Of a stretch of 64,000 bases of DNA, positions 21,034 to 63,263 are shown piece after piece. The notes under the pieces are model-generated. The model made no database searches, was not told the DNA's origin, and worked only from the letters and a program-made list of their open reading frames with translations. This stretch comes from Octopus sinensis (lineage: Eukaryota): positions 61,876,001 to 61,940,000 of the forward strand of contig NC_043010.1 of NCBI RefSeq assembly GCF_006345805.1, in the 5' to 3' direction. Within the stretch, counting starts at the first letter, position 1. Each line of letters starts with the position of its first letter. Position numbers and translations under genes: made by a program.

Positions 21034-21450
21034 AAGGCGGCGAGCTGGCAGAAGCGTTAGCACGCCGGACGAAATGCTTAGCAGTATTTCATCTGCCGCT
21101 ACGTTCTGAGTTCAAATTCCGCCGAGGTCGACTTTGCCTTTCATCCTTTCGGGGTCGATTAAATAAGTACCAGTTACACACTGGGGTCGATATAATCGAC
21201 TTAATCCATTTATCTGTCCTTGTTTGTCTCTCTGTGTTTAGCCCCTTGTGGGTAGTAAAGAAATAGGTATTTCGTCTGCCGTTAGGTTCTGAGTTCAAAT
21301 TCCGCCGAGGCCAACTTTGCCTTTCATCCTTTCGGGATCGATTAAATAAGTACCAGTTACGCACTGGAGTCGATGTAATCGACTTAATCCGTTTGTCTGT
21401 CCTTGTTTGTCCCCTCTATGTTTAACACCCTATGGGGAATAAAGAAATAT
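21034..21450 (+). mobile_element. tRNA-derived SINE family B, tandem dimer
   Basis: Head GGCGGCGAGCTGGCAGAA and core GCCTTTCATCCTTTCGGGGTCGAT. Other copies at about 9395-9755 (dimer), 45575-45780, 47401-47625 and 60790-61007 (plus), with several decayed minus copies at 51810-57510. Confidence 0.85.
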
Positions 21451-23994: not shown

Positions 23995-24026
<32 letters not shown>

Positions 24027-24419
24027 GGAGGGGGTGAGTGTAGTAAAGAGAGGGGTAGTGGTGGTAGTGATAATAGTGTTGACGGCGATGGTGATGGTGC
24101 AGTAAGTGGTGGGGGTGGGGTGGGGGGGGGTGGTATTAATGATTGTCGTGGTGGTGGTGGCTTAGCTGCAGGTAAATTTTGACCTCGAAAAATATGATCA
24201 CAAGCATTCCAGTCGTGATCATCCCGCCTTTTATTCAGACACCGTGTAACTAAGACCACTTTATTCAATATTTATATTATTTGAAATGGTAGAGTGTGAC
24301 ACGAAGAATGTTTGGCTGCTATTTCTAGCAGACCAAAATGACTACCTAACTCCTTGGTTGTCCCGTTATGGTGGTGGGGGTGGGGGGCCCAGCAGTATCG
24401 TTGACTGTTATGATGATAT

Positions 24420-25840
24420 AGAGAGAGGGGAAGGGAGAGGAGAGTGATTATAAGCGAGCAAGCAGAAGAGATAAGGGGAAAAGGGAGGAGGTGGCGGGGA
24501 ATGACGGTTTAATGTGTGTGGGGGGGAGACATAACAGGAAGATATCAGGGCAACAGAGGAGAGGAGAAGAGTGAAAGAGAGAAAGATAAAGGAAGAGAAA
24601 AAGAGAGTGAAAGAGAGAGAATTGGTGGGAGACTGCGACGAAGAGAGGAAGAAAGAGAAAAGTAAAAGAAGAGAAAAACAGAGTAAAAGAGAGAGAAGAA
24701 GTAAGAGAGAGGAGGGGAGACTGCAACGAAGAGAGGAAGAAAGAGAGAAGTAAGAAAGAGATATTTAGAGGTAGGAGGCATGATAAAAGGAGTGAGAGGT
24801 AGAGGTAAAAGTAAGAGAGAGTTTATTTATATTGCTTAGTGGTAGGAGGCAAGATGAAAAACAAGGGGGAAAGGATGAGGAGGAAAGAGAGGAAAAAGTA
24901 AGAAAGTAAGAAAAGTAAAGGGGGTGACAAGAAAAAAGTTCAATTATTGTGGTGGCGTTTAAAGAGAGAAAGGAAGAGGGTTTAAAGAATAAATAGAATA
25001 GAAGAGAGAGAGAGAGAGAGAGGAGAGTGGGGAAAGTAGGCCATGTTGTTGGTTGATGGTATTGGTGGGAGATATAATTAGTATTAGAGAGAGAGGGTGG
25101 TGGATAGATAAGAAAAGGAGAAAGTATGAGGAAAGTTACTGTGGTGGTGAGGGGCAAAATGACATAAAAAGGAAGGGGGAAAGAGAGAAGGAGGAGGAGG
25201 AGGAGGAGATAATAATAAAGAGCGAAAGATAAAATGGTCATGTTGCCGGGTATGGCGGCAGGAAAGATAATCGGAAGAGATAAGGAATGAAATGTAGGAT
25301 ATGAGGAGGGAGGGGGGAATAATTAAAGAAAGGGAGAGAGAGTAAGATGAAGGGAAAGAGAGAGAGAGAGGAATAGAAGGAAGGAATGGTATGTAGGAGG
25401 GAGAGGAAGAGAGGAAGAAAGAGGGAGAGAGAGTAACGAGAAAGCGAGAGAGAAAATAAGACGAAGAGAAATAGAGAATAAGAGGAGAAAGGGAGAGAGG
25501 TAGATAGAATAAGGATTGAGATAAAACCACGGAGAGAAAAGGAAAGAGAGTGAGACTTGGTTGTCAGGGAAGAAGATGAAGAGAAAAGAGATAATTTGAG
25601 AGGAAAGGAAAGAATAGGACGAAAGAGAAAGAATGAAAAAATTAGAGAAAACATGAAGGGAAAAGATTAGAGAGAATGTGTAGAGAAGTGTATGAGGACG
25701 ACAGAGGAGGAGGAGAAACGAAATGGCAGGGCAAAGGAAAATTAGAGAAAAAGTCGATAGAAAGAGAGCAATCATGGCGTATGTTTGTGGGGGAGGGAGG
25801 GGGGAAAAGGAATAGAGAAGGGGGAGAGGGAAGAGTTGTG
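24420..25840 (+). repeat. About 1.4-kb purine-rich (GA) low-complexity tract
   Basis: Strong purine strand bias; explains the Leu/Ser/Phe ORFs. Confidence 0.85.
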
Positions 25841-26151
25841 TTTTCTGTGTGTCTTTATCGTCTTTCTTTTACTCGGTTACGTGAGTGTGAGTGTGAGTGA
25901 GAGTGGAGGATGGAGAATGTGATGAAAGTTGGAAGGAAGCGAAGTCAGTGTTGTAGAAAAATAATGAGAAAACGGGGAGAAATCGATAATATCTAGTAAA
26001 AGTTGGGAGGGGGGAAAGGGGTAAGGAAGCGGAGGTTGATGGGGAAAACAATAAAATAACGAATTGCTTAGGGGGAAGGAGGGAGGGAGGAATAGCAGTC
26101 GTAGGAGTTGTGCAGAATATAAAACCACACACACATACACACACACACACA

Positions 26152-32859: not shown

Positions 32860-33046
32860 CTCATATTGTCGTTCAATGCTCGAAATGAGGAGTAGACAGG
32901 CAGCCGACAACTGATGAAGGGTCGTTCTTTATGTTACTTGTTCTGTTTTCCATTTGTTTCTCTCGTTGTTTGCGTATTCAATTCATTTGTTTTCGTATTT
33001 CATGTTGTTTACTGTTTGTGACGTCCTGTACCCATATATGCATATA

Positions 33047-33050
<4 letters not shown>
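32860..33050 (+). mobile_element. Interspersed repeat P6 ending GACGTCCTGTACCCATATATGCA at (TA)n
   Basis: Related minus-strand copy at about 50810-50990; inverted 3' end at 33301-33347. Confidence 0.5.
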
Positions 33051-33091
<41 letters not shown>

Positions 33092-33113
33092 TATATATAT
33101 ATATATATATATA

Positions 33114-33160
<47 letters not shown>

Positions 33161-33169
33161 TATATATAT

Positions 33170-33204
<35 letters not shown>

Positions 33205-33239
33205 TATATATATATATATATATGCATATATATATGCAT

Positions 33240-33299
<60 letters not shown>

Positions 33300-33742
33300 G
33301 ATATATATGCATATATGGGTACAGGACGTCACAAACAATAAACAACACACACATATATATATATATATTATATATATATTTATATGTTTTGTGTGTATTT
33401 GCATATATATATATATATGTATATATATTGTTTATATTCACACTACAGACACACACACACATATATATATTATATATACATATATTTATACGACAAGCTT
33501 CTTTCAGTTTCCGTATACCAAATCTACTCACAAGGCTTTGGTCGACCCGAGGCTGTAGTCGAAGACACTTCCCCAAGGGCCGCGCTGTGGGACTGAACCC
33601 GGAACCATGTGGTTGGGAAGCAAACATCTAACCACACAGCCACACGTATATATGTATGCATGAATGTATTTATATATGTGTATATATGAATATGTAAAAT
33701 TATGTATGTGTGTATGTATGTGTGTATATATATGTTTATATA

Positions 33743-44547: not shown

Positions 44548-45320
44548 GTGATGGTGGTATTAGTATTAGTAGTAGTAGTAGTGATGGCGGTGGTGGTGGT
44601 GGCCGTGGTGGTGGTGCTGGTGGTCGTAGTGGTGGTGGTGGTTCTGGTGGTGGTGCTGGTGGTAGTGGTGGTGGTGCTGGTGCTAGTGGTAGTGGTGGTG
44701 GTGCTGGTGGTGGTAGTGGTGGTGGTGGTGCTGGTGGTGGTAGTGGTGGTGGTGGTGCTGGTGGTGGTGCTGGTGGTAGTGGTGGTGGTGCTGGTGCTAG
44801 TGGTAGTGGTGCTGGTGGTGGTGCTGGTGCTAGTGGTAGTGGTGGTGGTGCTGGTGCTGGTGGTAGTGTGGTGGTGGTGGTGGTGGTGGTAGTGGTGGTG
44901 GTGGTGCTGGTGGTGGTGCTGGTGGTAGTGGTGGTGGTGCTGGTGCTAGTGGTAGTGGTGGTGTGGTGGTGGTGCTGGTGCTAGTGGTAGTGGTGGTGGT
45001 GGTGGTGCTGGTGGTAGTGGTGGTGGTGGTGGTGCTGTGGTAGTGGTGGTGGTGCTGGTGGTGGTGCTGGTGCTAGTGGTAGTGGTGGTGGTGGTGGTGC
45101 TGGTGGTAGTGGTGGTGCTGGTGGTGCTGGTGGTAGTGGTGGTGGTGGTGGTGCTGGTGGTAGTGGTGGTGGTGGTGGTGCTGGTGGTAGTGGTGGTGGT
45201 GCTGGTGCTGGTGGTAGTGGTGGTGGTGCTGGTGCTGGTGCTGGTGGTAGTGGTGGTGCTGCTACTGCTGGTTATGTGGTGGTGGCCGTGGTGGTGGTGG
45301 TGGTGGTGGTTGTAGTGTTG
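44440..45320. repeat. Compound (GGT/GCT/AGT)n trinucleotide tract
   Basis: Source of the poly-Gly/Val/Thr ORFs; no splice context. Confidence 0.9.
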
Positions 45321-45893
45321 GTTGTCGTCACCCACCCGATTTTAATGTCCTTCCACCATTTTGTAGCTCCACAGTTCTTAAAAACACCGAAACATTCCGC
45401 ATTTCTCAGAGAAAGAGAGCTTTTCTTTCCAACGAGCAACAATTCCCTAAACCATTTCCCTTCTTACTCTAATTAATCCCATTAATTACATCAACCTTTA
45501 CCTTAATTAACAGCTACATCTTCCAGCGGACACATCTAATGGGCTAACAGTATTATTACTTCGTAATACGAGTACAGCGGGCTGGCAGAACCGTTAGCAC
45601 GCCGGGCGAAATGCTTAGCGACATTTCGTCCGTTTTTACGTTCTGAGTTCAACTTCTGCTGGGGTTGACTTTGCCTTTCATCCTTTCAGGGTCGATAAAA
45701 TAAGTACCAGTTGAGTATTGGGGATCGATGTGATTGTCTTACTCCCCAACTCCCGAAATTGCTGGCCTTGTGCCAAAATGTGAAGTCGTTATTACGTCGA
45801 CGTCACTTCACGTAACTCTTTATTTCGGCAATATTTCCAGCGAACCGCGACATTGGGCGTAAGGATCTGACTAATGAATATTCCCGCTTCATA

Positions 45894-48829: not shown

Positions 48830-49165
48830 AGTGGCTATCTGGCCTCCGTGCCGGTGGCACATAAAAGACACCATTCGAGCATGATAGTTACCAGCATCGC
48901 CTTAATGGTACTTGTGCCAGTGGCATGTGTAAAAGATTCGAGTCAGGTCTTTGCCAGTACCGCCTGAATGGCCCCGTGCCAGTGGCATGTAAAAGCACCC
49001 ACTACACTCTCGGAGTGGTTGGCGTTAGGAAGGGCATCCAGCTGTAGAAACTCTGCTAGATCAAACTGGAGCCTGGTGTAGCCATCTGGTTCGCCAGTCT
49101 TCAGTCAAATCGTCCAACCCATGCTAGCATGGAAAGCAGACGTTAAAAGATGATGATGATGATGA
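48830..49165 (+). mobile_element. Family G copy just downstream of the protease stop
   Basis: Homologous to 22304-22910. Confidence 0.75.
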
Positions 49166-49390: not shown

Positions 49391-49600
49391 TTAAATTGAC
49401 CTGATAATCATTTTATTAGGATCACCAGTATCAAAGTCACCGTTTCTCTGCTTACGAAATACAGATCGTATCCACTTACTATAGAATGATATTTTACTAA
49501 ATACCGTCAAGTTATACCCAATTCCTCCAGAGTTTGCTCCAGCCAGGACGTATCTGCTTCTGGCATTACTGTAGCAAAATAGACCCGCCCCAGAATCCCC
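49391..49600 (-). CDS. Serine protease exon 6 (catalytic Ser in GDSGAG; to stop codon)
   Basis: Acceptor ttctcttgaatttcag|GGG GAT TCT. A phase-0 intron directly before GDS is typical of the trypsin family. Reads GDSGAGLFCYSNARSRYVLAGANSGGIGYNLTVFSKISFYSKWIRSVFRKQRNGDFDTGDPNKMIIRSI*. Exon total 849 nt = 282 aa + stop. Confidence 0.92.
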   Translation of the reverse strand, partial: GDSGAGLFCYSNARSRYVLAGANSGGIGYNLTVFSKISFYSKWIRSVFRKQRNGDFDTGDPNKMIIRSI

Positions 49601-49634
49601 CTGAAATTCAAGAGAAAACAATAACAATTACCAA

Positions 49635-49681
<47 letters not shown>

Positions 49682-49684
<3 letters not shown>

Positions 49685-50188
49685 TTGGAAGTGTTATCAT
49701 GTACATTGTTTTGTCTTGGTATAAAAGATGGGCTACAGCAAATATTCTGCTCAATACCACAGATTTGCTTGTCAGTTGCTTGACCTTAACAAGTTGAGCA
49801 TGTCCCTTAGTGGCTGACGATATGTGCATCTCTGATCACGAGCAGAAGTAGTGGGGGAGCATCATAGCCATGTGTTGAGAGGGATTCTTTGGGGTTTGAA
49901 TAATTCAGCTTTGGAAACATGGGTGTTTCGTTCAACATCCTTAAACAACCCTTATTCAGGGACCTTTTGAACAGGATGGACTACTCAACCTGAAGAAAAT
50001 TCTAGCTGGACCCCACCTGCAAGGTCATGCGCTGTTTGTCTTGATATCAGATCACCATGTTGTGCACATTTGGTTGTGATGCATGTGTCTGGTGTACCCT
50101 TATCAGACAGGCACTCATAATGGGTAAAATGGGCTTCCTATAATTGTACCCCAGTGTCACTTTGATGGCGTGCACTGCTCTCTCACTT
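49682..50188 (+). mobile_element. Family C copy, 5'-truncated, in protease intron 5
   Basis: Lacks the first roughly 50 nt of the other copy; (AAT)n at both ends. Confidence 0.8.
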
Positions 50189-50342
50189 GATAATAATAAA
50201 TGAATAAATAAAAGTAAAAAGTAAAAAATAAAACAGTAAACAACTGTTTTATAATTATCAGTCTGTCTATCTGTCTGTCTATGTACGTCTGTCTGTCTGT
50301 CTGTATGTATGTATGTATGCTATCTATCTGCCTATATATTTA

Positions 50343-50412
<70 letters not shown>

Positions 50413-50434
50413 ATATAATATAATATAATATAAA

Positions 50435-50741
50435 TCTTTATATATAAAATTCAAGTTGTGTGTGTGAGACTCTGTCTCCCCCGATTTAGATTCCTAACTA
50501 CTCCCACATTTTGCGGTGCAGTTTAACCAAAACCGGGTATCTTATAATCGTCATTCACATCGAGCCCTTCTGGGTATTAGCGCGCGTCTACGATGAGTCT
50601 ACGATTTAAAAAAAAATTTACCATCATTTTTCCGCATTTTAATTGAATTTTGCTCGGGTTATATAAGGGAAGTAACTCTCTAAAAATGCTTATATAGTTA
50701 TTTCCCTTACAAATCCGAGCAACGCCGGGCGATACTGCTAG
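50435..50741 (+). mobile_element. Non-autonomous Helitron, subfamily D2, in protease intron 5
   Basis: Same ends and body as the 45894 copy, without the duplication. Confidence 0.8.
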
Positions 50742-51179
50742 TAATATATAAATATATGCATATATACATATATATATGTACATGCCCACATCTATATGTA
50801 TATATACATGCATATATGGGTACAGGACATCAAAAAAACGTTGAACACAATGAGAAACAAAAACGTAAAAACAAAAACATAGAAAACGAACAACACAAAA
50901 CACAAACAGAGAAACGAGACATACAACATAAAGAAAATTCCCCCTCATCAGTTGACCCCGTTTCATCTACTCCGCATTTCGAAGGCAAGAAAAAGACCTG
51001 ACTTTGTTGAAACGGTCCTTCCCGCAAAGCAAATTAAATAAAATTTGGGATTTTTATATATATATATCTGACTGTCTATCCGTCTGTCTGTCTCTCTGTA
51101 TCTATCTAATTAGATGTACTATTCTGTACGTGAATAGGTGTAAATAATTATCATAATTAAAGTTATTAATTACTCTTAC

Positions 51180-51585
51180 TCTTTTACTCTTTTACTTGTT
51201 TCAGTCATTTGACTGCGGCCATGCTGGAGCACCGCCTTTAGTTGAGCAACTCGACCCCGGGACTTATTCTTTGTAAGCCCAGTACTTATTCTATCGGTCT
51301 CTTTTGCAGAACCGCTAAGTGATAGGGACATAAACAAACCAGCATTGGTTGTCAAGCAATGCTAGGGGGACAAACACAGACACACAAACACACACACGCA
51401 TATATATATATATACATATATACAACGGGCTTCTTTCAGTTTCCGTCTACCAAATCCACTCGCAAGGCTTTGGTCGGCCCGAGGCTATAGTAGAAGACAC
51501 TTGCCCAAGGTACCATGCAGTGGGACTGAACCTGGTACCATGTGGTTGGTAAGCAAGCTACTTACCACACAGCCACTCCTGCGCC
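51180..51585 (-). mobile_element. SINE family A in protease intron 5
   Basis: Near-consensus full-length copy, about 50 bp from the exon 5 donor. Confidence 0.85.
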
Positions 51586-51637
51586 TATTAATTACTGAAG
51601 TTAATTACAAATTGAGACCCGGAATGTATTGACTTAC

Positions 51638-51789
51638 ATTAGCTGTGGTTTGTAACTTCGGCATGAACCTTTTCATGCAAATGTCAGAATCTTCGGAGAA
51701 AGAGCTGTTCTCAGACCTGCAGTCTTTTGGGTTCGTCATGACCATCACTCCCTCATGTAACGTATTTGTTAATATCTTTTTTTTGCGAC
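51638..51789 (-). CDS. Serine protease exon 5 (SRKKKILTNTLHEGVMVMTNPKDCRSENSSFSEDSDICMKRFMPKLQTTAN)
   Basis: Acceptor tatttgtag|GT, donor AAT|GTAAGT, 152 bp, phase 1-0. L-H-E motif plus two Cys at the 168 and 182 positions. Confidence 0.88.
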
Positions 51790-52027
51790 CTACAAATACA
51801 AATAATCTTTTCTATTAAAGGCACAAGGACTGAAATTTGGGAGAGAGGGGACTAGGCAGTTACAGCGACCCCAGTACACAACAGGTACTTCATTTATTGA
51901 CCTCGAAAGGATGAAGGACAGAGTTAACCTTGGCAGAGTTTGAACTCAAAACGTAAATACGGATGAAATGCTGCCAAGCATTTTGCCTGGTGTGCTAACG
52001 ATTCTGCCAGCTTGCTGCCTTGATATA

Positions 52028-52326
52028 AATAATGATGATGACAACGACGATGACGACTATGATGACGATGATGACGACGATGATGATGATGATGACAATG
52101 ATGATGATGATGACGATGATGACAATGATGACGACGATGATGACGATGATGACGACGATGATGACGATGATGACGTCGATGACGACGATGACGACGATGA
52201 TGATGATGACGACGATGACGATGATGACGATGATGACGACGATGACGACGATGATGATGATGATGACGATGATGACGATGATGATGATGATGATGATGAT
52301 GATGATAGTAATAATAATAATAATAA
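52028..52326. repeat. (GAT/GAC)n then (TAA)n trinucleotide tract
   Basis: Directly visible. Confidence 0.95.
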
Positions 52327-52327
52327 T

Positions 52328-53580
52328 GTAAATGTGGAAGTTACTGTCAGGAGGAATTGCAGAAGAACTGTATAAGTTTCTTGATGAAAACGATATATTA
52401 CCGACAGAACAAAAGAACTGTAGAAGGAGATGCAGAGGTACCAAAGATCAACTATTGATAGACAAAATGGTAATCCAAGATTGTAAACGAAGGAGAACAA
52501 ATCGTGGATCATGGAGTGCTTGGATCTGTTTGGAATTGCGAGGAATGTAACGTGTTTCCTGAAGAGAAGTATGGTGGGAGGGAAAACTGAACTGACATCT
52601 TACAGAAAAAAGCTTGGGCACCTTGGGTATCTGAAGAGGGATTTTCCAGGGTGGCAGCCTATCTCCATTGCTTTTTTTTCTCTGCATGATACCCCTGACC
52701 TTGGTACTCAAGAAAGTGAACCTGGAGTACCAACTAAAGGAAAGATCCCAAACAATCGGCCACCTCCTCTTCATGGATGAAATGAAACTTTATGGCAAAG
52801 ATGAGACACAAGTCAGTTCCTTGGTGAACATGGTTCACTGTTTTAGAACTGATATTAGAATGGAATTTGGACTGAGAAAGTGTGGAGTAATTTACCTAAA
52901 AAGAGGCAAAGTACAGTCCCTAGCAGGGATAGAATTACCAAATAGAAACTTGAATAAGCAAATTGAAATGGAAGGATACAAATACCTTGGTGTACTTGAG
53001 TTCAATGAGATAAACGAAGAGGACATGAAAGAGCAACTGAGGATGGAGTATTTCCGAAGACTGAGGTTGGTGTTGACTGGATGGAATAACATTCAAGCAG
53101 TTAATATGTGGGCGATAGCATCACTTCGGTATGAAGCAGGAATTATAAAATGGCAAAAGAGAGAAATGAAGAAAATGGATGCCAAGACCAGAAAAATGTT
53201 GAGAGTACGCAGGGCCTTCCATTCTAAGAGTGACACCGATAGGCTGTACTTGTCCAGAAGAAAGGATGGGAGAGGTTTGATCAGTTGCCAGGACTGTATT
53301 GAAGCAGAGGAATATAAAAAGCCTAGGTATATAAAAAACGCTGTGGAGCCACTGTTGAAACACACAAAGAAGGCCAGTGTCATCAAAGCTGAAAATTGTG
53401 GACCTGCCACATGATAAAAACTGGTGGGAACAGAAACCACCTCCAATACTTGAAAATGACCGCGTCACACTCCTCTGAAACTTCACCATTCAAACTGACA
53501 GAAAGATAGATGCAAATAGGCCAGACGTTATGTTGAAAGACTTCAGACCAAAATCATGCCTCCTCATTGATATGACAACC
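52328..53580 (+). mobile_element. R4/Dong-like LINE fragment (RT + RLE with internal deletion), in protease intron 4
   Basis: [21 protein letters not shown] and YKYLGVLE RT motifs, then TIQTDRKIDANRPDVMLKD...CLLIDM endonuclease motif. The 5' edge abuts (TAA)n. Confidence 0.8.
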
Positions 53581-53872
53581 CATTAACCACTTCTATAAGG
53601 TGCAAAGGCCTTAGATTTTGGCGAAAGGGGACTGGTCAATTACATCAACCCCAGGACTCAACTGGTATTTATTTCATCAACCCCAAAAGGGCACAAAGCA
53701 AAGCTGGAGTTTGAACTCAGAACGTAAAGACAGACAAAATGCTGCTAATGATTCTGCCAGCCTGCCACCATAGTGATGATGATAATGATGATGATGACGA
53801 CGACAATGATGATGATGATGACGGTAGTAGTGATGATGATGATGATGACAACGACGACGACGATGATGATGC

Positions 53873-53903
<31 letters not shown>

Positions 53904-54007
53904 GATTCTTTCTAACCTTGACCCAGTGCCATGAGTTTTGTCAGTTTTACATTGAGCCCAGTGTTTGACTGGTTGTTTTTTTTTCTTTCATTGACTCAGA
54001 AAGGATC

Positions 54008-54274
54008 AAAGATTAAGATGAAAGATTAAGATGAAAGATTAAGATGAAAGATTAAGATGAAAGATTAAGATGAAAGATTAAGATGAAAGATTAAGATGAA
54101 AGATTAAGATGAAAGATTAAGATGAAAGATTAAGATGAAAGATTAAGATGAAAGATTAAGATGAAGATTAAGATGAAAGATTAAGATGAAAGATTAAGAT
54201 GAAAGATTAAGATGAAAGATTAAGATGAAAGATTAAGATGAAAGATTAAGATGAAAGATTAAGATGAAAGATTA
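54008..54274. repeat. 13-bp minisatellite (AAAGATTAAGATG), about 20 units
   Basis: Near-perfect array embedded in a decayed SINE B. Confidence 0.95.
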
Positions 54275-54554
54275 GAATGTAAAGAGTTGGAAGAAAAGCT
54301 GCCAAAGTATTTCCTTTGATGTGTTTCCAGGATTTTGTCACCTCGATGCCTTAATATTGGTTTCAAATTTTGGCACAAGGCCAGCAATTTTGGCAGAGGG
54401 GTTAAGTTGATTAATATCAGCCCCAGTGTTCAATTGGTGCTTATTTTATTGACCCCAAAAGGGATGAGAAACAAAGTTGCCCTCGTCAGAATTGGAACTC
54501 AGATGGACAAAATGCTGCAAAGCAATTTGCCTGGCATTTTAACAATTCTGCCAG

Positions 54555-55055
54555 CTCACTACCTTACACTGCCTCACACTGCCTCACACTGCCTCACACT
54601 GCCTCACACTGCCTCACACTACCTTACACTGCCTCACACTGCCTCACACTGCCTCACACTGCCTCACACTGCCTCACACTGCCTTACACTGCCTCACACT
54701 GCCTTACACTGCCTCACACTGCCTCACACTGCCTCACACTGCCTCACACTACCTTACACTGCCTCACACTGCCTCACACTGCCTCACACTGCCTCACACT
54801 GCCTCACACTGCCTCACACTACCTTACACTGCCTCACACTGCCTCACACTACCTTACACTGCCTCACACTGCCTCACACTACCTTACACTGCCTCACACA
54901 GCCTCACACTGCCTCACACTGCCTCACACTGCCTCACACTACCTTACACTGCCTCACACTGCCTCACACTGCCTCACACTGCCTCACACTGCCTCACACT
55001 GCCTTACACTGCCTCACACTGCCTCACACTGCCTCACACTGCCTCACACTGCCTT
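54555..55055. repeat. 10-bp minisatellite (GCCTCACACT), about 50 units
   Basis: Array with an ACCTTACACT variant, at the head of a minus-strand SINE B. Confidence 0.95.
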
Positions 55056-55444
55056 AATAATGACAATAATTCATTCTGCCATAGGCACAAGGCCTGAAAT
55101 TTTAAGGGAAAGAACCAATCGATTTCATCAACCCCACTACATGACTGGTACTTATTTTATTAACCTCCAAAAAGACAAAAGGCAAAGTTCACCTTGGGGA
55201 AATTTGAATTCAGAATATAAAATCTCAAGAAATAGTGTTAAGGATTTTGTCAGATGCCTGAATGGTTCTGCCAGCTTGAAGCCCTAATGATGATGATGAT
55301 GATGATGATGACAACAACGACAATGATGATGATGATGATGGTAAAGACAACAACAACCACTGCCTCAGCAACAACAACCAACAACAATTAAAACAAACAG
55401 GATTAACATAGAATTAATGACATCAAAGCCATTTTTATACTTAC

Positions 55445-55579
55445 TTAATCTCCCCCAACCTGCCACATAGCAGGTATCCTTCAAGTTGTTCACATCCACT
55501 GGTTTAATCATTTCGGCAATCTGCACAGATTTCGACAGTTGCACTGGAACTTTGGTGTACAACATGGCAATGTCGTTTC
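55445..55579 (-). CDS. Serine protease exon 4 (catalytic Asp in NDIAML; CYVAGWGRL)
   Basis: Acceptor caacag|GA, donor TTA A|GTAAGT, 135 bp, phase 1-1. Lies within ORF 55365..55652. Confidence 0.92.
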
Positions 55580-57099
55580 CTGTTGATTCCAAGAAAATCA
55601 AAAAAAAGGAAAAAGATTGGAATGATGAACGGATTAAGTTGAAAATATTCAAATAAGGAGAAGCAAATGAAATTTAGTTAATCCCTGGTTGCCATATTTC
55701 CCAGCATGCAATTTGACAAATAATATGGTCTAAACATTCAAACAGAGTTTAATGCTGGAAGAACAACTTTGAGTAAATGTTTTCTAATCCTTTTGTTACC
55801 AAGCTGGCTGAAACCAGCTCTGGCTCTGTAGTACAAATGTCTTGTTTTCATAAGTTTTGAATTAAAATCTTCTACCAAACCTTAGTCACAATTCATGTTC
55901 CTAACACTAACTTAATGATAGCCAAATTATTTTACTAAATTCTTTGTTATCATCATTATCATCATTTAACGTCCGCTTTCCATGCTAGCAAGGGTTGGAT
56001 GATTTTGACTGAGGACTGGTGAACCAGATGGCTGCACCAGGCTCAAGTCTTGATCTGACAGAGTTTCTACAGCTGGATGCCCTTCCTAACGCCAACCACT
56101 CTGAGAGTGTAGTGGGTGGTTTTACGTGCCACCTGCACGGGGCCATTCAGGCGGTACTGACAATGACCTCGCTCAAATCTTTTTACATGTGCCACCGACA
56201 CAGGTGCCAGTGAAGCAACGTTGGTAATGATCAGCGACGTTGGTTATATTTAAAATTAATTGAAAGAAACACAGAGCCTCTCAAAAGAAATACTCATAGC
56301 AATAGAACCATATTTACCATATTCATCTATATTGACCCTTTTGACACCAACCAGCTTAAGACTGCCCCTGACCCAATGATACAGATTCCTTGTTTTAAAA
56401 TAATCTAAATTAAAGCCTGTCATCAAAATTTGATGTTAATTTAGGATCTAAACAGCAGCTTAATAACGATGCAATTATTTTACCAAATTTTTTAATATTT
56501 TCAAAATTAATTAAAACCGGTGTTAATTTATTTCAACAGAAATATTGTAACAAAAGGATGAATAGTTTAAGTTTTATTTGTAAAACCACAGAGGGAAAAA
56601 GATAATAATTAATTCGTTTGTTAGCCATAAGGACTCACATAAAATTACATTAAAAGACATACAACAACAAAAAAGACAAAAACAAGATGAAAGAATGGGG
56701 TTTACAATGTGAAAACAATATAACAATGATCAAAAATTAAACAAATTAAAACTCCCAATAAGGGAGGTGCATTAAGGACCTCATGAAAAAACCTACAAAA
56801 GTCACAGGTACCTGAACAACAGGGCAAGAACCATTCTCCTTTTCTTTAATAATATGCCTAAATGCTTATATAGTAATGAACCAGTTCCAGCATTTGATCC
56901 TCAGAAGAGAAGAGTTTGGTAAAACAGTCAAAGTTACTATCTTCAGTTTGGTTTCGGTGCCAATCTTTAGCAATGGTCATAAATATTGGTTATTGACTGA
57001 AAGATCCTCTGATGGATCTCTCGAATAATGTCACTTGACAAATTGCATAGCTTAGAGATCAAGGAATCTCTCCAAGATGAGTTGTTACTTTTCCACTTA

Positions 57100-57365
57100 G
57101 AGAGGTCACAGTCCCGGTACTACAGACATGTAATCAGGAAAAGACCCAAAGGCAGATTCTTCAAGAACTAGTTAACCAGCAGGGGACCCAGGGGAAGACT
57201 GAGAACAAGATGGCTAGATAATATCCAGAGTTTCATTTGATTAGACTTGGGGATCAAACCAGAAAGTCTAATGACAGTTGCTTCTGATAGGATCGTATGG
57301 GGAAGGTTCTTGACAATTCTACCACTACAGTCCACCTAGGAATAATGGATGGAGAAGATGAACAG
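57100..57365 (+). mobile_element. RTE LINE 3' fragment
   Basis: RLRTRWLDNI ... VASDRIVW, an RTE C-terminal pattern. Confidence 0.5.
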
Positions 57366-57852
57366 ACAGAATTTTTGCAAGACACCAAGATGGTAGAATC
57401 GTTACAACACCAAAGAAATGCTTTGTGCTATTTGTTACAATTCTTTACATTCAGAGTTCAAATCACACTTGAGTCTACTTTGCCTTTCATTCCTCCAGGG
57501 TTGAGAAAATAAAGAACCACTCAAGTACTGAAACTGAGTGCACCTTCAACGCTTCAAGTTGTTGCTTTTGAGTCTAAATCAGAAACCATTTACGAGGTTG
57601 AGCCCTCCCTCAGATGTCATTTGCCTGAGGTGCTGCAACAAGGAATTGAACACAGCACTGAGGGATTGAGAAACAGACTTCTTAATAACACAACCTGAGC
57701 TTTTACAGAAGGAACTGTTGGTACCATCACCACCATGTCCACCACTACCACTACTACTAACACCACCACCACCATAGCCATCATTATCTCAACCACCACC
57801 ACCACCACCACCACCATGCATACTCAGAAAGAAAGAATGTCGGTCCACGTAC

Positions 57853-57971
57853 TTCTGCCGGTTACATTCCCACCATAGTCTGGGTGGCGGATGACGGCTT
57901 TAATTGTGTATTTCCTTCCAGAGAATTTTTTGTTGTCTCCAACATAAACTTCAATGGGTGGGGGTTTAAAA
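57853..57971 (-). CDS. Serine protease exon 3 (FKPPPIEVYVGDNKKFSGRKYTIKAVIRHPDYGGNVTGR)
   Basis: Acceptor tttctccccag|T (phase 2), donor AGA A|GTACGT (phase 1), 119 bp. Contains the V-x-V-G and I-x-H-P-D-Y motifs of S1A proteases. Phases match both neighbours. Confidence 0.88.
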
Positions 57972-57999
57972 CTGGGGAGAAACAAAGGCAGAGATTATG

Positions 58000-58520
58000 T
58001 TGGATTTGTAACGTATACGGAACATGGATGAGAGAGCTGGAGGCCAGGAGGTGTTTGTATTGAATTAGTAAGATAGATGGAGGGTGGAGGATAGAACTGG
58101 AGGCCAGAAGGTGTTTGTATTGAATTTGTAACATAGATGGAGGGTGGATGAGAGAGCTGGAGGCCAGAAGGTGTTTGTATTGAATTAGTAACATAGATGG
58201 AGGGTGGATGAGAGAGCTGGAGGCAAGGAGGTGTTTGTATTGAATTAGTAACATAGATGGAGGGTGGAGGATAGAACTGGAGGCAAGGAGGTGTTTGTAT
58301 TGAATTAGTAGCCTGAATGGAGGATGGATGAGAGAGCTGGAGGCAAGGAGGTGTTTGTATTGAATTAGTAACATAGATGGAGGGTGGAGGATAGAACTGG
58401 AGGCAAGGAGGTGTTTGTATTGAATTAGTAGCCTGAATGGAGGATGGATGAGAGAGCTGGAGGCCAGAAGGTGTTTGTGTTGAACTGGTATGGATGGTGG
58501 ATGAGAGGGCTGGAGGACAG
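58000..58520. repeat. 60-bp minisatellite, about 8.5 units, in protease intron 2
   Basis: Consecutive 60-nt lines of the listing align directly. Confidence 0.95.
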
Positions 58521-59219
58521 AGTGTCTTTGTGCAACCCATAGCAGTGATATAAGAGTCAGGTTGTGAGGTCAAGGAATATATTGTACACAAATGATAAAT
58601 GATACACCATGCTTTACATATATACTTTGATATTCATTGCCAAACACAATTTTAGGGGTAGGCATGGCTGTGGGGTAAGAAGCTTGCCTCTCAACCACAT
58701 GGTTCTGGGTTCAGCCTCAGTGTGTGGCATCTTCAGTAAGTGTCTTCTACAATAGCCTTGGGCTGGCCAAAGCCTTGTGAGTGAATTTGGTAGACGGAAA
58801 CTGAAAGAAGCCCACCGTATATGTGTGTGTGTGTGTGTGTGTAAATTTCAATGTAACTCATTATCTTCATTCAAACAGACCTCAACATTTATTTTCTTCG
58901 CCCCTGCTGCCAATATGCACACACACACACACAGGCGTGCGCACACACACACAAACAGGCACGCGCACACACACACACACACAGGTGCGCGCACACACAC
59001 ACACAAACACGTGCACTTACAAACACACACACACACAAACACACGCACACACACACGCACACAAACACATGTGCACACACACAGACACACACACACACAC
59101 ACACACAAACACGTGCACACACGAACACACGCACACACACACACACAGACACAAACACATGTGCACACACACACACACACATCACTGCTGCTGCCAACCT
59201 GGATAAACCGTTTACTCAC

Positions 59220-59370
59220 GTGCAGTGGGATGCTGTGAGGATGAAGTGTGATGATATCAGATTGCCGCTGCACGTTCCAACCGATATGCGGACAAAGACG
59301 GCCGAAGGATGTTTGAAGATGGACGTCACCTTACCATTGGCAACGGCATAACTGCCCAAAGACTCTTGAT
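59220..59370 (-). CDS. Serine protease exon 2 (activation site SYA|VANG, Cys42, catalytic His in TASHC)
   Basis: Acceptor cctttacag|AT, donor TGC AC|GTGAGT. Translates DQESLGSYAVANGKVTSIFKHPSAVFVRISVGTCSGNLISSHFILTASHC. A phase-2 intron just after the His motif is typical of trypsin-family genes. Confidence 0.92.
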
Positions 59371-60019
59371 CTGTAAAGGATGAGAGAAAGAAAGAAAGAA
59401 GTAAATGTGTGTTGGTAGAATATGGTGGTGGTGGTCGTGGAGGGAGATGGTTAATATTTGTCTGTTTTGTTGTCATCAATTATTCTCTCACTGCCACTTC
59501 TGTCATCATAATTGTCATTGTTATCATTGTCCACGACCATGACCACCACCATGAAGACGACGACCACGACGACGACCTTGACCACCACGACCACCACCAT
59601 CACCACCACCACCACCACCACCACCACCACCGCCACCATCACCACCACCACCACCATCTTCATAAATTCCTCATCGTCTAATATTGTTAATGACGAAGCC
59701 ACTGAACGGTGACCATCCTGGGAAACAGTCCCATGTATGTCTTGTGTCTTGGGAGGGTCATAACACCAACAGTAATAATAATAACACATGCACTGGTTCA
59801 ACAGCACTTGTTTATTGATTGTTAATTGGTGAAATATTTAACGAATTTGACCAATTTCTTACTCGAGCCATTTCCTCCCTATGGACCATTGGCCATCCAC
59901 AACTTTTCTCCATTATCATTGAATGCAGGCTGTCTTTTTCTGCATCTCTCCACTTGGATCCCTGCATTTTCAGGTTTCCCTGAGTATCCTGCCTCCAGCT
60001 ATTTTTAGGGTCCCCTCTC

Positions 60020-60230
60020 TCATCATCATCATCATTGTTCAACTGTGGTCGAGACAATGGAATTTACCATGCTACGCCAGACTTCATGGTCCATCATGGC
60101 ATTACGGAGGTCCTGTTGCTTGATGCCTGTAGCTGATCCCCCTCTCTTGTGGGTTCTGGGCCAGGGCCTGAATACGTTTCTCTGGACAAAAGCCTTTCTC
60201 TCTCAGCTTTTATTCGTTTTGAAGGGTCAC
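60020..60230 (-). mobile_element. RTE LINE 3' end with (TGA)n tail
   Basis: GIKQQDLRNAMMDHEVWRSMVNSIVSTTVEQ* followed by tgatgatga. Confidence 0.6.
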
Positions 60231-60369
60231 TGATGCTTCTGTAATTTTACTTGTTTCTAGGCAGGAGGTGTTGACCCTCCGCAGCCCCGTTTTTATTTCT
60301 GGGCAGAGGTGGCTCACAATAATCTGACCTGTATTGTTTGTCCTTTAGTGGGCAGATACCATCTGTTAC

Positions 60370-60451
60370 CTGTCAGCTGGAGATATTTCTCTCTCTGTGA
60401 CAATACACAGGCAAAACAGACATAAATAACTATAGAGAAACTGTAAGTCAT
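60370..60451 (-). CDS. Secreted S1A serine protease, coding exon 1 (signal peptide + start of propeptide: MTYSFSIVIYVCFACVLSQREKYLQLT)
   Basis: ATG at 60451-60449, then a hydrophobic stretch ending VLS. Phase-1 donor ACAG|GTAACA joins the phase-1 acceptor of exon 2 to make GAT (Asp). Not in the ORF track; found by reading the reverse strand. Confidence 0.75.
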
Positions 60452-62736: not shown

Positions 62737-63227
62737 ATGGTGGCATTCTGTAGTTCATTTTAGTGGTGGCAGTGGCGGTGGTGGTTGTGGTGGTGGTGGT
62801 TGTGGTGGTGGTTGTGGTGGTGGTTGTGGTGGTGGTGGTGGTGGTGGTGGTGGTGATTGGTTTCGATGATGGTAGTGATGATGGTTGTGTAATGTGGGTG
62901 GTGTTTTGTAGCTGATGGTAACGATGATGATGATGATGATGATGATGCTGATGTTATTGATGTAGTGGCTGTGATGCTGGTAATCACACATTTATATAGA
63001 GAGATCAACAGATACACATAAGAAAGAACTCACCGTGATATCCTTGACCAGTGGCCATTATATGAACGAAGAGTGAAAGCCATGTAAAGAAGGCAACCAC
63101 GGGTCTGTAGGGTCCCCTCCTTCCGGCTGTTTCCAATGTGGATAACCAGCGCTGACCAATAACCATCTTCCTTCAACAAACTCCGGTGAACAAATAGAAG
63201 ATCCGTTTGCAATATTTAAGCTCCCAG

Positions 63228-63263
<36 letters not shown>

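What the first reader, a model, noticed from the sequence alone, without database searches (positions are those of the whole stretch)
49391..60451. Complete unannotated six-exon secreted serine protease with coordinated loss of the C191-C220 disulfide
Seen: a 282-aa product with signal peptide and intact His/Asp/Ser. Only the Cys at 42/58, 136/201 and 168/182 remain. Position 191 is Ala (TTAN-GDS) and 220 is Tyr (SGGIGY), so both partners are lost together; W215 is Gly, G197/P198 are Ala/Gly, and the 220 loop is short. Known: absence of this disulfide characterises granzymes, chymase and cathepsin G, and cephalopod posterior salivary (venom) glands express diverse S1A proteases. Inferred: a lineage-specific, possibly venom or digestive, protease with a remodelled substrate cleft.
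Basis: partly seen in the sequence, partly recalled or inferred. Interest (0 to 1): 0.7.

Follow-up and report, generated by a model that had tools for sequence, protein, structure and literature searches.

The report
Annotated octopus three-disulfide serine protease gene

Summary
Exons 2-6 and all the residue-level observations are confirmed. The catalytic His/Asp/Ser are intact. There are only six Cys (42-58, 136-201, 168-182). Position 191 is Ala, 220 is Tyr, 215 is Gly and 197/198 are Ala/Gly.

Two claims fail.
- The gene is not unannotated. The window is identical to Octopus sinensis chromosome CM016872.1. The corrected 299-aa product equals RefSeq XP_036365259.1 ("granzyme E isoform X1"). 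Predicted orthologues exist in O. vulgaris and O. bimaculoides.
All three annotations use a first exon at 63166-63034.

The gene is under purifying selection (dN/dS 0.18 in the protease domain) and models confidently as a chymotrypsin fold.

An exhaustive search found only two further relatives, both transcripts from unidentified sequencing runs (38-43% identity), and both also lack Cys191 and Cys220. The four sequences form a clade with 99.5% bootstrap. It is weakly sister to octopus salivary-gland proteases and separate from vertebrate granzymes, so the disulfide loss is convergent.

The activation site has no basic residue. Tissue, substrate and any venom role are untested. Interest is low to moderate.

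The parts
63034..63166 (-). True coding exon 1 (133 nt, ends in phase 1, donor G|GTGAGT). It encodes MVIGQRWLSTLETAGRRGPYRPVVAFFTWLSLFVHIMATGQGYH: a basic n-region, a 16-residue hydrophobic core, then A-T-G, so a probable cleavable signal peptide.
   Evidence: tblastn of the O. bimaculoides N-terminus hits here at E=1e-20. The sequence was read. The ORF, ATG and donor are conserved without indels in O. bimaculoides, and the 5' flank is highly conserved. The same ORF is intact in O. vulgaris. With this exon the product equals XP_036365259.1.
60370..60451 (-). Judged to be intron-1 sequence and not part of the gene product.
   Evidence: The O. bimaculoides homologue has an in-frame TAA before the donor. 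Its identity equals the intron baseline. It is absent from the annotated products in three species. It is intact in O. vulgaris, but its only two differences from the O. sinensis window are both amino-acid changes, and the species are too close to be informative.
59220..59370 (-). Exon 2 (151 nt). It holds the propeptide end and the start of the mature domain (..SLGSY-AVANGK..), Cys42, and His57-Cys58 (His codon 59227-59225).
57853..57971 (-). Exon 3 (119 nt): FKPPPIEVYVGD...HPDYGGNVTGR.
55445..55579 (-). Exon 4 (135 nt): Asp102 (codon 55574-55572) and Cys136 (CYVAGWG).
51638..51789 (-). Exon 5 (152 nt): Cys168, Cys182, Thr189 and Ala191 (codon 51643-51641). It ends after Asn192 in phase 0.
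49391..49600 (-). Exon 6 (210 nt including the stop). It holds Gly193-Asp194-Ser195 (Ser codon 49594-49592), Ala197, Gly198, Cys201, Ser214-Gly215-Gly216, Tyr220 (49516-49514), the NLT sequon, and a 25-residue C-terminal tail.
63167..63236 (-). Conserved 5' flank or 5'UTR directly upstream of the start codon. It is nearly identical in O. bimaculoides.
   Evidence: alignment. Function as UTR or promoter is inferred, not shown.

Best explanation
The locus is LOC-type gene 'granzyme E' of Octopus sinensis, a name assigned automatically. It is a single-copy, six-coding-exon gene spanning 63166-49391 on the minus strand, and it encodes a 299-aa secreted zymogen of a divergent chymotrypsin-fold (S1A) serine protease.

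Shown here:
- The gene model, and its identity to the RefSeq product.
- Orthologues in O. vulgaris and O. bimaculoides.
- Purifying selection.
- An intact catalytic triad, oxyanion-hole Gly193, Asp194 and Ser214.
- Three disulfides only.
- A confident chymotrypsin-fold model.
- Membership of a four-sequence clade that all lack Cys191 and Cys220 and have no Trp215.

Inferred:
- A signal peptide is cleaved around A-T-G|Q.
- A propeptide of about 12-13 residues is then removed at ..S-Y|A-V-A-N-G or ..Y-A|V-A-N-G. The P1 residue is therefore Tyr or Ala, not Arg/Lys, so activation is not by a trypsin-like enzyme.
- The enzyme is catalytically active with a non-tryptic S1 pocket (Thr189, Gly216, Thr226). 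This predicts a preference for small to medium uncharged P1 residues.
- Without the 191-220 staple and without Trp215, the S1 to S3 wall is more open or flexible, as in vertebrate granzymes, chymases and cathepsin G.
- The disulfide loss arose independently of that vertebrate group.

The tissue and physiological substrate are unknown.
For: - Gene model and splice sites.
- The window is identical to O. sinensis CM016872.1 over 24,610 nt with 0 mismatches.
- The product is identical to XP_036365259.1.
- Orthologues.
- dN/dS against O. bimaculoides is 0.23 overall and 0.18 in the protease domain, with dS 0.31.
- Pfam Trypsin at 105 bits.
- PDB alignments place Ala at Cys191, and show no Cys in the 220 loop.
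- In a column census of 501 aligned domains, Cys191 is present in 394 of 429 non-gap cells.
- AF2 gives pLDDT 88.2 and pTM 0.86. The only disordered stretch is residues 4-17 of the 263-aa form, which ends exactly before VANGK.
- Foldseek matches proteases only, with target-normalised TM-scores of 0.75-0.88 over the 50 rows shown, the highest for bovine duodenase.
- The relatives P0012/P0153 and P0016 share the features.
- NJ tree: the clade has 99.5% bootstrap and the vertebrate granzyme/cathepsin G sequences group elsewhere.
Against: - No transcript or protein data were available here, so exon 1 usage rests on orthologue conservation and on others' automated annotations.
- The signal peptide has an unusually long n-region (22 residues) and could not be scored with a dedicated predictor.
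- The activation site is non-canonical. The residue that would pair with Asp194 (Ala or Val) is uncertain, so the protein might need an unknown activator or be poorly active.
- The NJ tree is a simple distance tree at about 30% identity.
Confidence: 0.8

Rival explanations
1. The reader's model is right, or is a real alternative isoform. Transcription can start inside intron 1, and exon 60451-60370 supplies a compact signal peptide, giving a 282-aa secreted protease in O. sinensis and O. vulgaris.
For: The ATG, the open frame, a strongly hydrophobic core and a good phase-1 donor (CAG|GTAACA) are present. The frame is also open in O. vulgaris. It is the only candidate outside simple repeats with a good donor in intron 1.
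Against: O. bimaculoides has an in-frame stop in the homologous stretch. Conservation is not above the intron baseline. Both RefSeq isoforms and the O. vulgaris and O. bimaculoides models start in the 63166 exon. The only two O. vulgaris/O. sinensis differences in the stretch both change amino acids. It lies just downstream of a degraded retroelement fragment.
Confidence: 0.08
2. It is a posterior-salivary-gland (venom) protease, a divergent member of the cephalopod-specific venom-gland S1 expansion.
For: The closest named relatives outside the clade are S1 peptidases cloned from octopus venom glands (O. kaurna and Abdopus, 33-35% identity). The tree puts the clade as their sister. Salivary-gland expression in octopods is dominated by serine proteases of a cephalopod-specific clade (PMC7656900).
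Against: The sister grouping has only 52% bootstrap. Those gland proteases keep Cys191-Cys220. The gene is a singleton, with no second S1 domain in 64 kb and no other called gene within 10 kb on either side. No expression data exist, and nothing was found in the O. vulgaris gland database supplement, which is truncated and annotation-only.
Confidence: 0.2
3. It is a catalytically dead or decaying protease homologue. The lost disulfide, W215G, the altered 197/198 and the non-canonical N-terminus together mean it no longer cleaves peptides.
For: Several normally conserved positions are changed at once (Pro198 in 387 of 427 and Cys191 in 394 of 429 non-gap cells). There is no basic activation site.
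Against: The triad, Gly193, Asp194 and Ser214 are all intact and conserved wherever present in every clade member. dN/dS is 0.18. Vertebrate granzymes and chymases are active without this disulfide (established knowledge; alignments). Ala197 (41 domains) and Gly198 (24 domains) recur in other domains of the census.
Confidence: 0.08
4. It is a true orthologue or homologue of vertebrate granzymes, as the RefSeq name 'granzyme E' implies.
For: The best PDB sequence hit is rat granzyme B (1fi8, E=4e-17), followed by elastases, cathepsin G and granzyme C. Elephant granzyme H-like proteins are the next profile hits after the clade. It shares the absence of Cys191-Cys220.
Against: Identity is only 27-30%. 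The tree separates the two groups. The propeptide and N-terminus differ. The gene has six coding exons with His, Asp and Ser on exons 2, 4 and 6. The attraction is most simply explained by the shared missing cysteines and shorter loops.
Confidence: 0.02

Closest known systems
RefSeq XP_036365259.1 'granzyme E isoform X1' [Octopus sinensis] (and isoform X2, XP_036365260.1)
   Same: The corrected 299-aa product of this window is 100% identical to it. The window DNA is identical to that assembly. It is the same gene.
   Different: Nothing differs. The name is an automated best-hit label, not a tested function.
O. vulgaris CAI9733387.1 'transmembrane protease serine 12-like' and O. bimaculoides 'chymotrypsin-like elastase family member 2B' (P0001, P0002)
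   Same: They are orthologues (one residue different, and 87% identical overall). They have the same six-exon structure, the same TTANGDSGAG and NSGGIGYN motifs, and the same six Cys.
   Different: The O. vulgaris model starts at internal Met37, although the upstream ATG is intact in its genome. The O. bimaculoides introns are shorter: the gene spans 6.85 kb against 13.8 kb.
Cephalopod posterior-salivary-gland S1 peptidases (O. kaurna ACJ22645.1; Abdopus aculeatus SP1-Abd-16; O. sinensis 'chymotrypsin-1')
   Same: They are the nearest named relatives (29-35% identity). Their activation sites are also non-basic (..H|IVNG..Q|IVEG). The O. kaurna protein also has GDSGTG instead of GDSGGP.
   Different: They retain Cys191 and Cys220 and an aromatic residue at 215. 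The grouping is only weakly supported, at 52%.
Vertebrate granzymes, chymases, cathepsin G and duodenase
   Same: They have the three-disulfide pattern without Cys191-Cys220, a shortened 220 loop, and non-tryptic S1 pockets in several members. They include the best PDB sequence match and the highest target-normalised TM-score.
   Different: Identity is about 27-30%. They form a separate clade. They keep Gly197-Pro198. They are activated by removal of an N-terminal dipeptide to expose Ile-Ile-Gly-Gly (established knowledge), whereas this protein has a longer propeptide and A-V-A-N-G.
Pancreatic elastase (e.g. 1bru, 1b0e)
   Same: They are the second-best PDB sequence matches (E about 4e-16) and share the same fold. 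Thr226, as in elastase, suggests a restricted S1 pocket (the residue assignment is by alignment).
   Different: Elastases keep Cys191-Cys220 and longer 220 loops, and are activated by trypsin.

Membership tests
Peptidase family S1A (chymotrypsin fold; Pfam PF00089 Trypsin) | Significant match to the family profile above the curated cut-off | tested here: met
   105.4 bits against a cut-off of 20.6, E=5e-30, covering profile positions 4-220 of 220
Peptidase family S1A (chymotrypsin fold; Pfam PF00089 Trypsin) | Catalytic triad His57, Asp102 and Ser195, with oxyanion-hole Gly193 and Asp194 | tested here: met
   TASHC, NDIAM and NGDSGAG sit at the aligned columns. They are conserved in every clade sequence that covers them.
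Peptidase family S1A (chymotrypsin fold; Pfam PF00089 Trypsin) | Double beta-barrel chymotrypsin fold | tested here: met
   The AF2 model has pLDDT 88.2 and pTM 0.86. Foldseek gives 1,634 PDB matches at E<=0.001, and the 50 shown are all S1A proteases or complexes containing one, with target-normalised TM-scores of 0.75-0.88.
Peptidase family S1A (chymotrypsin fold; Pfam PF00089 Trypsin) | Zymogen activation by cleavage after Arg/Lys15 to expose Ile/Val16 | tested here: not met
   There is no basic residue before the mature domain. The sequence is ..ESLGSY-AVANGK.., and the relative has ..ANY-TVVGK... This feature is typical of the family but not universal.
Peptidase family S1A (chymotrypsin fold; Pfam PF00089 Trypsin) | Peptidase activity | not testable with these tools
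   Needs recombinant or native protein.
Vertebrate granzyme / chymase / cathepsin G group (the RefSeq name) | Absence of the Cys191-Cys220 disulfide | tested here: met
   Ala191, and no Cys in the 214-227 loop.
Vertebrate granzyme / chymase / cathepsin G group (the RefSeq name) | Phylogenetic grouping with the vertebrate haematopoietic proteases | tested here: not met
   In the NJ tree the elephant granzyme H-like and fish cathepsin G-like sequences form their own group. The octopus clade groups with cephalopod peptidases.
Vertebrate granzyme / chymase / cathepsin G group (the RefSeq name) | Two-residue activation peptide and an Ile-Ile/Val-Gly-Gly N-terminus (from established knowledge) | tested here: not met
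   The predicted propeptide is about 12-13 residues and the N-terminus is A-V-A-N-G.
Cephalopod-specific salivary-gland (venom) S1 peptidase clade | Monophyly with the gland-derived cephalopod S1 peptidases | tested here: inconclusive
   Recovered as sister group, but with 52% bootstrap and 29-35% identity.
Cephalopod-specific salivary-gland (venom) S1 peptidase clade | Expression in the posterior salivary gland or presence in saliva | not testable with these tools
   No expression data are reachable. Literature and supplement searches were negative.
TMPRSS12 / type II transmembrane serine proteases (the O. vulgaris name) | N-terminal transmembrane anchor and stem region, and orthology to TMPRSS12 | tested here: not met
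   The only hydrophobic segment is 16 residues long and is followed by A-T-G. There is no stem domain. Dolphin TMPRSS12 is 34% identical over the matched stretch and 30% in the trimmed tree alignment, and it groups elsewhere.

The most novel reading that the evidence does not exclude
The four sequences define a previously unrecognised clade of three-disulfide, Trp215-less S1A proteases, possibly restricted to cephalopods. These enzymes would be activated by a non-tryptic cleavage (P1 Tyr or Ala) and would converge structurally on vertebrate granzymes and chymases. They would have their own substrate specificity and a specialised role, for example in immunity, venom or extracellular digestion.
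Probability: 0.15. Interest if true: 0.45.

Novelty: new member of a known kind. Interest (0 to 1): 0.22.

Why it matters
If the enzyme is active, it is a natural, independent repeat of the structural change that defines vertebrate granzymes, chymases and cathepsin G: loss of the 191-220 disulfide that staples the S1 pocket wall. It could show how that change alters specificity in a very different lineage.

In practice the result mainly corrects three things:
- The gene model. The real first exon is 2.6 kb further upstream.
- The claim that the gene is unannotated.
- Three mutually inconsistent automated names: granzyme E, TMPRSS12-like and elastase 2B.

This is otherwise an ordinary conserved gene of a very large family.

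Tried and rejected
- Sequencing runs. I tried to identify the organisms behind SRR6517992, SRR7369732, SRR8281662, SRR8281663 and SRR8281687, which carry the only other clade members. Literature searches for the accessions found nothing relevant, so their taxon is unknown.
- Literature. I searched for the gene under its three automated names and for three diagnostic peptide strings, and found no paper.
- Gland database. I searched the supplements of the O. vulgaris salivary-gland protein database paper for the peptides and found no hit. The files are truncated and mostly hold annotation, so this is not evidence of absence.
- Model geometry. I looked for the AF2 coordinates, to measure the triad, the N-terminus to Asp194 distance and the 191/220 contact. 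No coordinates are exposed.
- Chance estimate for exon 1. I tried to estimate how often a fake first exon arises by chance in intron 1. The count is dominated by microsatellite ORFs and gives no usable probability.
- Intronic ORFs. A Pfam scan of intronic and flanking ORFs gave only a sub-threshold reverse-transcriptase hit.
- Pseudogene or dead enzyme. Rejected on the intact triad and dN/dS.
- True granzyme homology. Rejected on the tree, the propeptide and the exon structure.

Full report
**1. What is in the sequence**

It has six pieces (60451-60370, 59370-59220, 57971-57853, 55579-55445, 51789-51638, 49600-49391). All introns are GT-AG. The CDS is 849 nt and the product is 282 aa.

The product matches Pfam Trypsin (PF00089) at E=5e-30 and 105 bits, against a cut-off of 20.6. 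It matches hundreds of solved S1A proteases. The best are rat granzyme B, elastases, cathepsin G and granzyme C. tblastn of the product against the whole window finds no second protease copy.

**2. Source and annotation**

A search of 5.8 billion proteins returned a 263-aa O. vulgaris protein ('transmembrane protease serine 12-like') that is 100% identical over exons 2-6. It also returned a 299-aa O. bimaculoides protein ('chymotrypsin-like elastase family member 2B') at 89%.

The same 90% cluster holds O. sinensis RefSeq XP_036365259.1 and XP_036365260.1, 'granzyme E' isoforms X1 and X2.

The window is identical, with 0 mismatches over 24,610 nt, to O. sinensis chromosome CM016872.1 at about 61.92-61.95 Mb. 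The gene is therefore annotated in three species. 'Unannotated' is wrong.

**3. The first exon**

The O. bimaculoides N-terminus maps to window 63166-63020 at E=1e-20.

That site has an ATG at 63166, a 133-nt open frame and a strong donor (CACG|GTGAGT) in phase 1. Phase 1 is what exon 2 needs.

Aligned to O. bimaculoides, the ATG, the frame (no indels) and the donor are all conserved. The 70 nt upstream are almost invariant. The internal Met37 that the O. vulgaris model uses as its start is Val in O. bimaculoides. The upstream ATG is intact in the O. vulgaris genome.

With exon 1 at 63166-63034 the CDS is 900 nt, and the 299-aa product is identical to XP_036365259.1.

- The homologous O. bimaculoides stretch reads MTYSFYKVIYVCFACVLSQREISPAE-stop, with the stop before the conserved GT.
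- Its 85% DNA identity is no higher than that of the surrounding introns, which are 77-92%.
- The frame is open in O. vulgaris. However, that species is about 2% diverged, and its only two differences from the window sequence in the stretch both change amino acids.
- The stretch sits just 3' of a degraded retroelement fragment.

RefSeq isoform X2 joins the 63166 exon directly to exon 3, skipping exon 2 and losing His57. It again uses the 63034 donor.

I cannot exclude rare use of it without RNA-seq.

**4. The residue observations**

These hold. The 299-aa protein has exactly six Cys, at chymotrypsin positions 42, 58, 136, 168, 182 and 201. In PDB alignments Ala aligns to Cys191 of elastase, and no Cys exists in the 214-227 loop.

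I made a column census of 501 aligned S1 domains drawn from the closest proteins in the two big searches. The counts below are out of the non-gap cells in each column.

| Position | Usual residue | Count in census | This protein |
|---|---|---|---|
| 191 | Cys | 394 of 429 | Ala |
| 198 | Pro | 387 of 427 | Gly |
| 197 | Gly | 353 of 426 | Ala |
| 215 | Trp or Phe | 214 of 386 | Gly |

The loop from 214 to 227 is 6 residues shorter than in two elastases and 3 longer than in granzyme B. His57, Asp102, Gly193, Asp194, Ser195 and Ser214 are intact.

**5. Is it a working gene?**

- Against O. bimaculoides, dS is 0.28 and dN is 0.063. This gives dN/dS of 0.23 overall and 0.18 in the protease domain. 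The leader evolves faster, at 0.56.
- AF2 with a 59-sequence alignment gives pLDDT 88.2 and pTM 0.86. Apart from the weakly modelled C-terminal tail (block means 65-67), the only stretch below pLDDT 50 is residues 4-17 of the 263-aa form. That stretch is the propeptide and ends just before V-A-N-G-K.
- Foldseek finds only S1A proteases among the rows shown, with target-normalised TM-scores up to 0.88 for duodenase.

This is a constrained gene that is probably catalytically competent.

**6. Relatives**

An exhaustive HMMER scan of 1.84 billion cluster representatives found 10,710 homologues. Only two are close and single-domain: P0012 (39%) and P0016 (43%). P0153 is a near-identical cluster-mate of P0012.

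All of these come from roughly 1-kb contigs assembled from five sequencing runs whose organism I could not determine.

They share AGWGxLSR, GDSG(A/T)x and VxAGxxS motifs with this protein. They lack both Cys191 and Cys220, and they have Arg at position 215 instead of Trp. A profile search of the 5.8-billion-protein set added no further members.

The next best named relatives are octopus venom-gland S1 peptidases from O. kaurna and Abdopus, at 33-35%. Both keep the disulfide.

In an NJ tree with 200 bootstraps:
- The four-sequence clade has 99.5% support.
- Its sister position to the gland peptidases has only 52% support.
- Vertebrate granzyme H-like and cathepsin G-like proteins group elsewhere.

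The coordinated loss is therefore real, shared by a small clade, and convergent with the vertebrate case. Other scattered domains in the census also lack both cysteines, so the event is not unique in the family.

**7. How it probably works (inference)**

- The leader has a 22-residue basic n-region, a 16-residue hydrophobic core (VVAFFTWLSLFVHIMA) and then T-G-Q. That fits a cleavable signal peptide better than a membrane anchor.
- The propeptide (about QGYHDQESLGSY[A]) has no Arg or Lys at its end. The relative has ..ANY-TVVGK.. at the same place. A conserved Tyr therefore sits one or two residues before the new N-terminus. This points to activation by a chymotrypsin- or elastase-like cut, or by self-activation.
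- By alignment, the S1 pocket residues are Thr189, Gly216 and Thr226. These predict a non-tryptic preference for small or medium uncharged side chains.
- Losing the 191-220 staple and Trp215 should make the S1 to S3 wall more open or flexible.
- An N-x-T sequon directly follows position 220. It is conserved in O. bimaculoides and in P0016 and may carry a glycan there.

None of this has been tested.

**8. Role**

Octopod posterior salivary glands are rich in a cephalopod-specific expansion of serine proteases (PMC7656900). I found no expression or proteomic evidence for this gene. It is a singleton rather than part of a tandem array. A venom or digestive role remains a guess.

**9. Verdict**

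This is an ordinary, conserved and already predicted gene of a very large family, with a modestly interesting convergent structural change. The exon 1 and signal peptide assignment and the claim of novelty were not.

Noticed in passing
window 39391-64000 (whole stretch compared): The window is byte-identical to Octopus sinensis assembly GCA_006345805.1, chromosome CM016872.1, at about 61.915-61.949 Mb (reverse strand). No other gene is called within 10 kb either side of the protease gene.
   Followed up: yes
window 63085-63034 joined to 57971 onward (minus strand): RefSeq isoform X2 (221 aa) skips exon 2 (151 nt, which holds His57). It uses a different ATG and frame within exon 1 to stay in frame with exons 3-6. 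It is probably a non-productive or aberrant transcript.
   Followed up: partly
L008 9893-10025 (O. vulgaris OX597827.1): The O. vulgaris annotation (CAI9733387.1, 263 aa) starts at internal Met37 and so lacks the signal peptide. The upstream ATG and the full 44-codon exon 1 are intact in that genome, so the annotated model looks truncated. It also has Val instead of Gly at residue 42.
   Followed up: yes
They include FGFVPERSTTDA and YADD-type reverse-transcriptase motifs, and the Pfam RVT_1 hit is sub-threshold (E=0.008). The insertion is shared with O. bimaculoides.
   Followed up: partly
window 49511-49513 region (protein residues 260-262, NLT): An N-glycosylation sequon sits immediately after position 220, where the lost cysteine would be. 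It is kept as NMT in O. bimaculoides and as NLT in the distant relative P0016, but not in P0012. A glycan might substitute for the disulfide in stabilising the loop.
   Followed up: no
protein residues 197-201 (window about 51739-51725, exon 5): Five consecutive residues differ between O. sinensis and O. bimaculoides (MTNPK against TAEAG), just before Cys168, in an otherwise conserved domain. This is a local hot spot in a surface loop.
   Followed up: no
window 54004-54274, 54557-55054 (intron 4); 58025-58484 (intron 2); 44581-45322; 33034-33316; 21084-21449: There are large tandem arrays: a 13-mer x21, a 10-mer x50, a 60-mer x7.7, (GTG)n over about 740 bp, (AT)144, and a 183-bp unit x2 with a tRNA-like B-box motif. 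Similar SINE-like copies give near-identical short ORFs at about 48850-49080 (+) and 55985-56230 (-).
   Followed up: no
window 24001-26000: A 2-kb block has extreme strand asymmetry (GC skew +0.72, AT skew +0.35). It is presumably a purine-rich low-complexity repeat.
   Followed up: no
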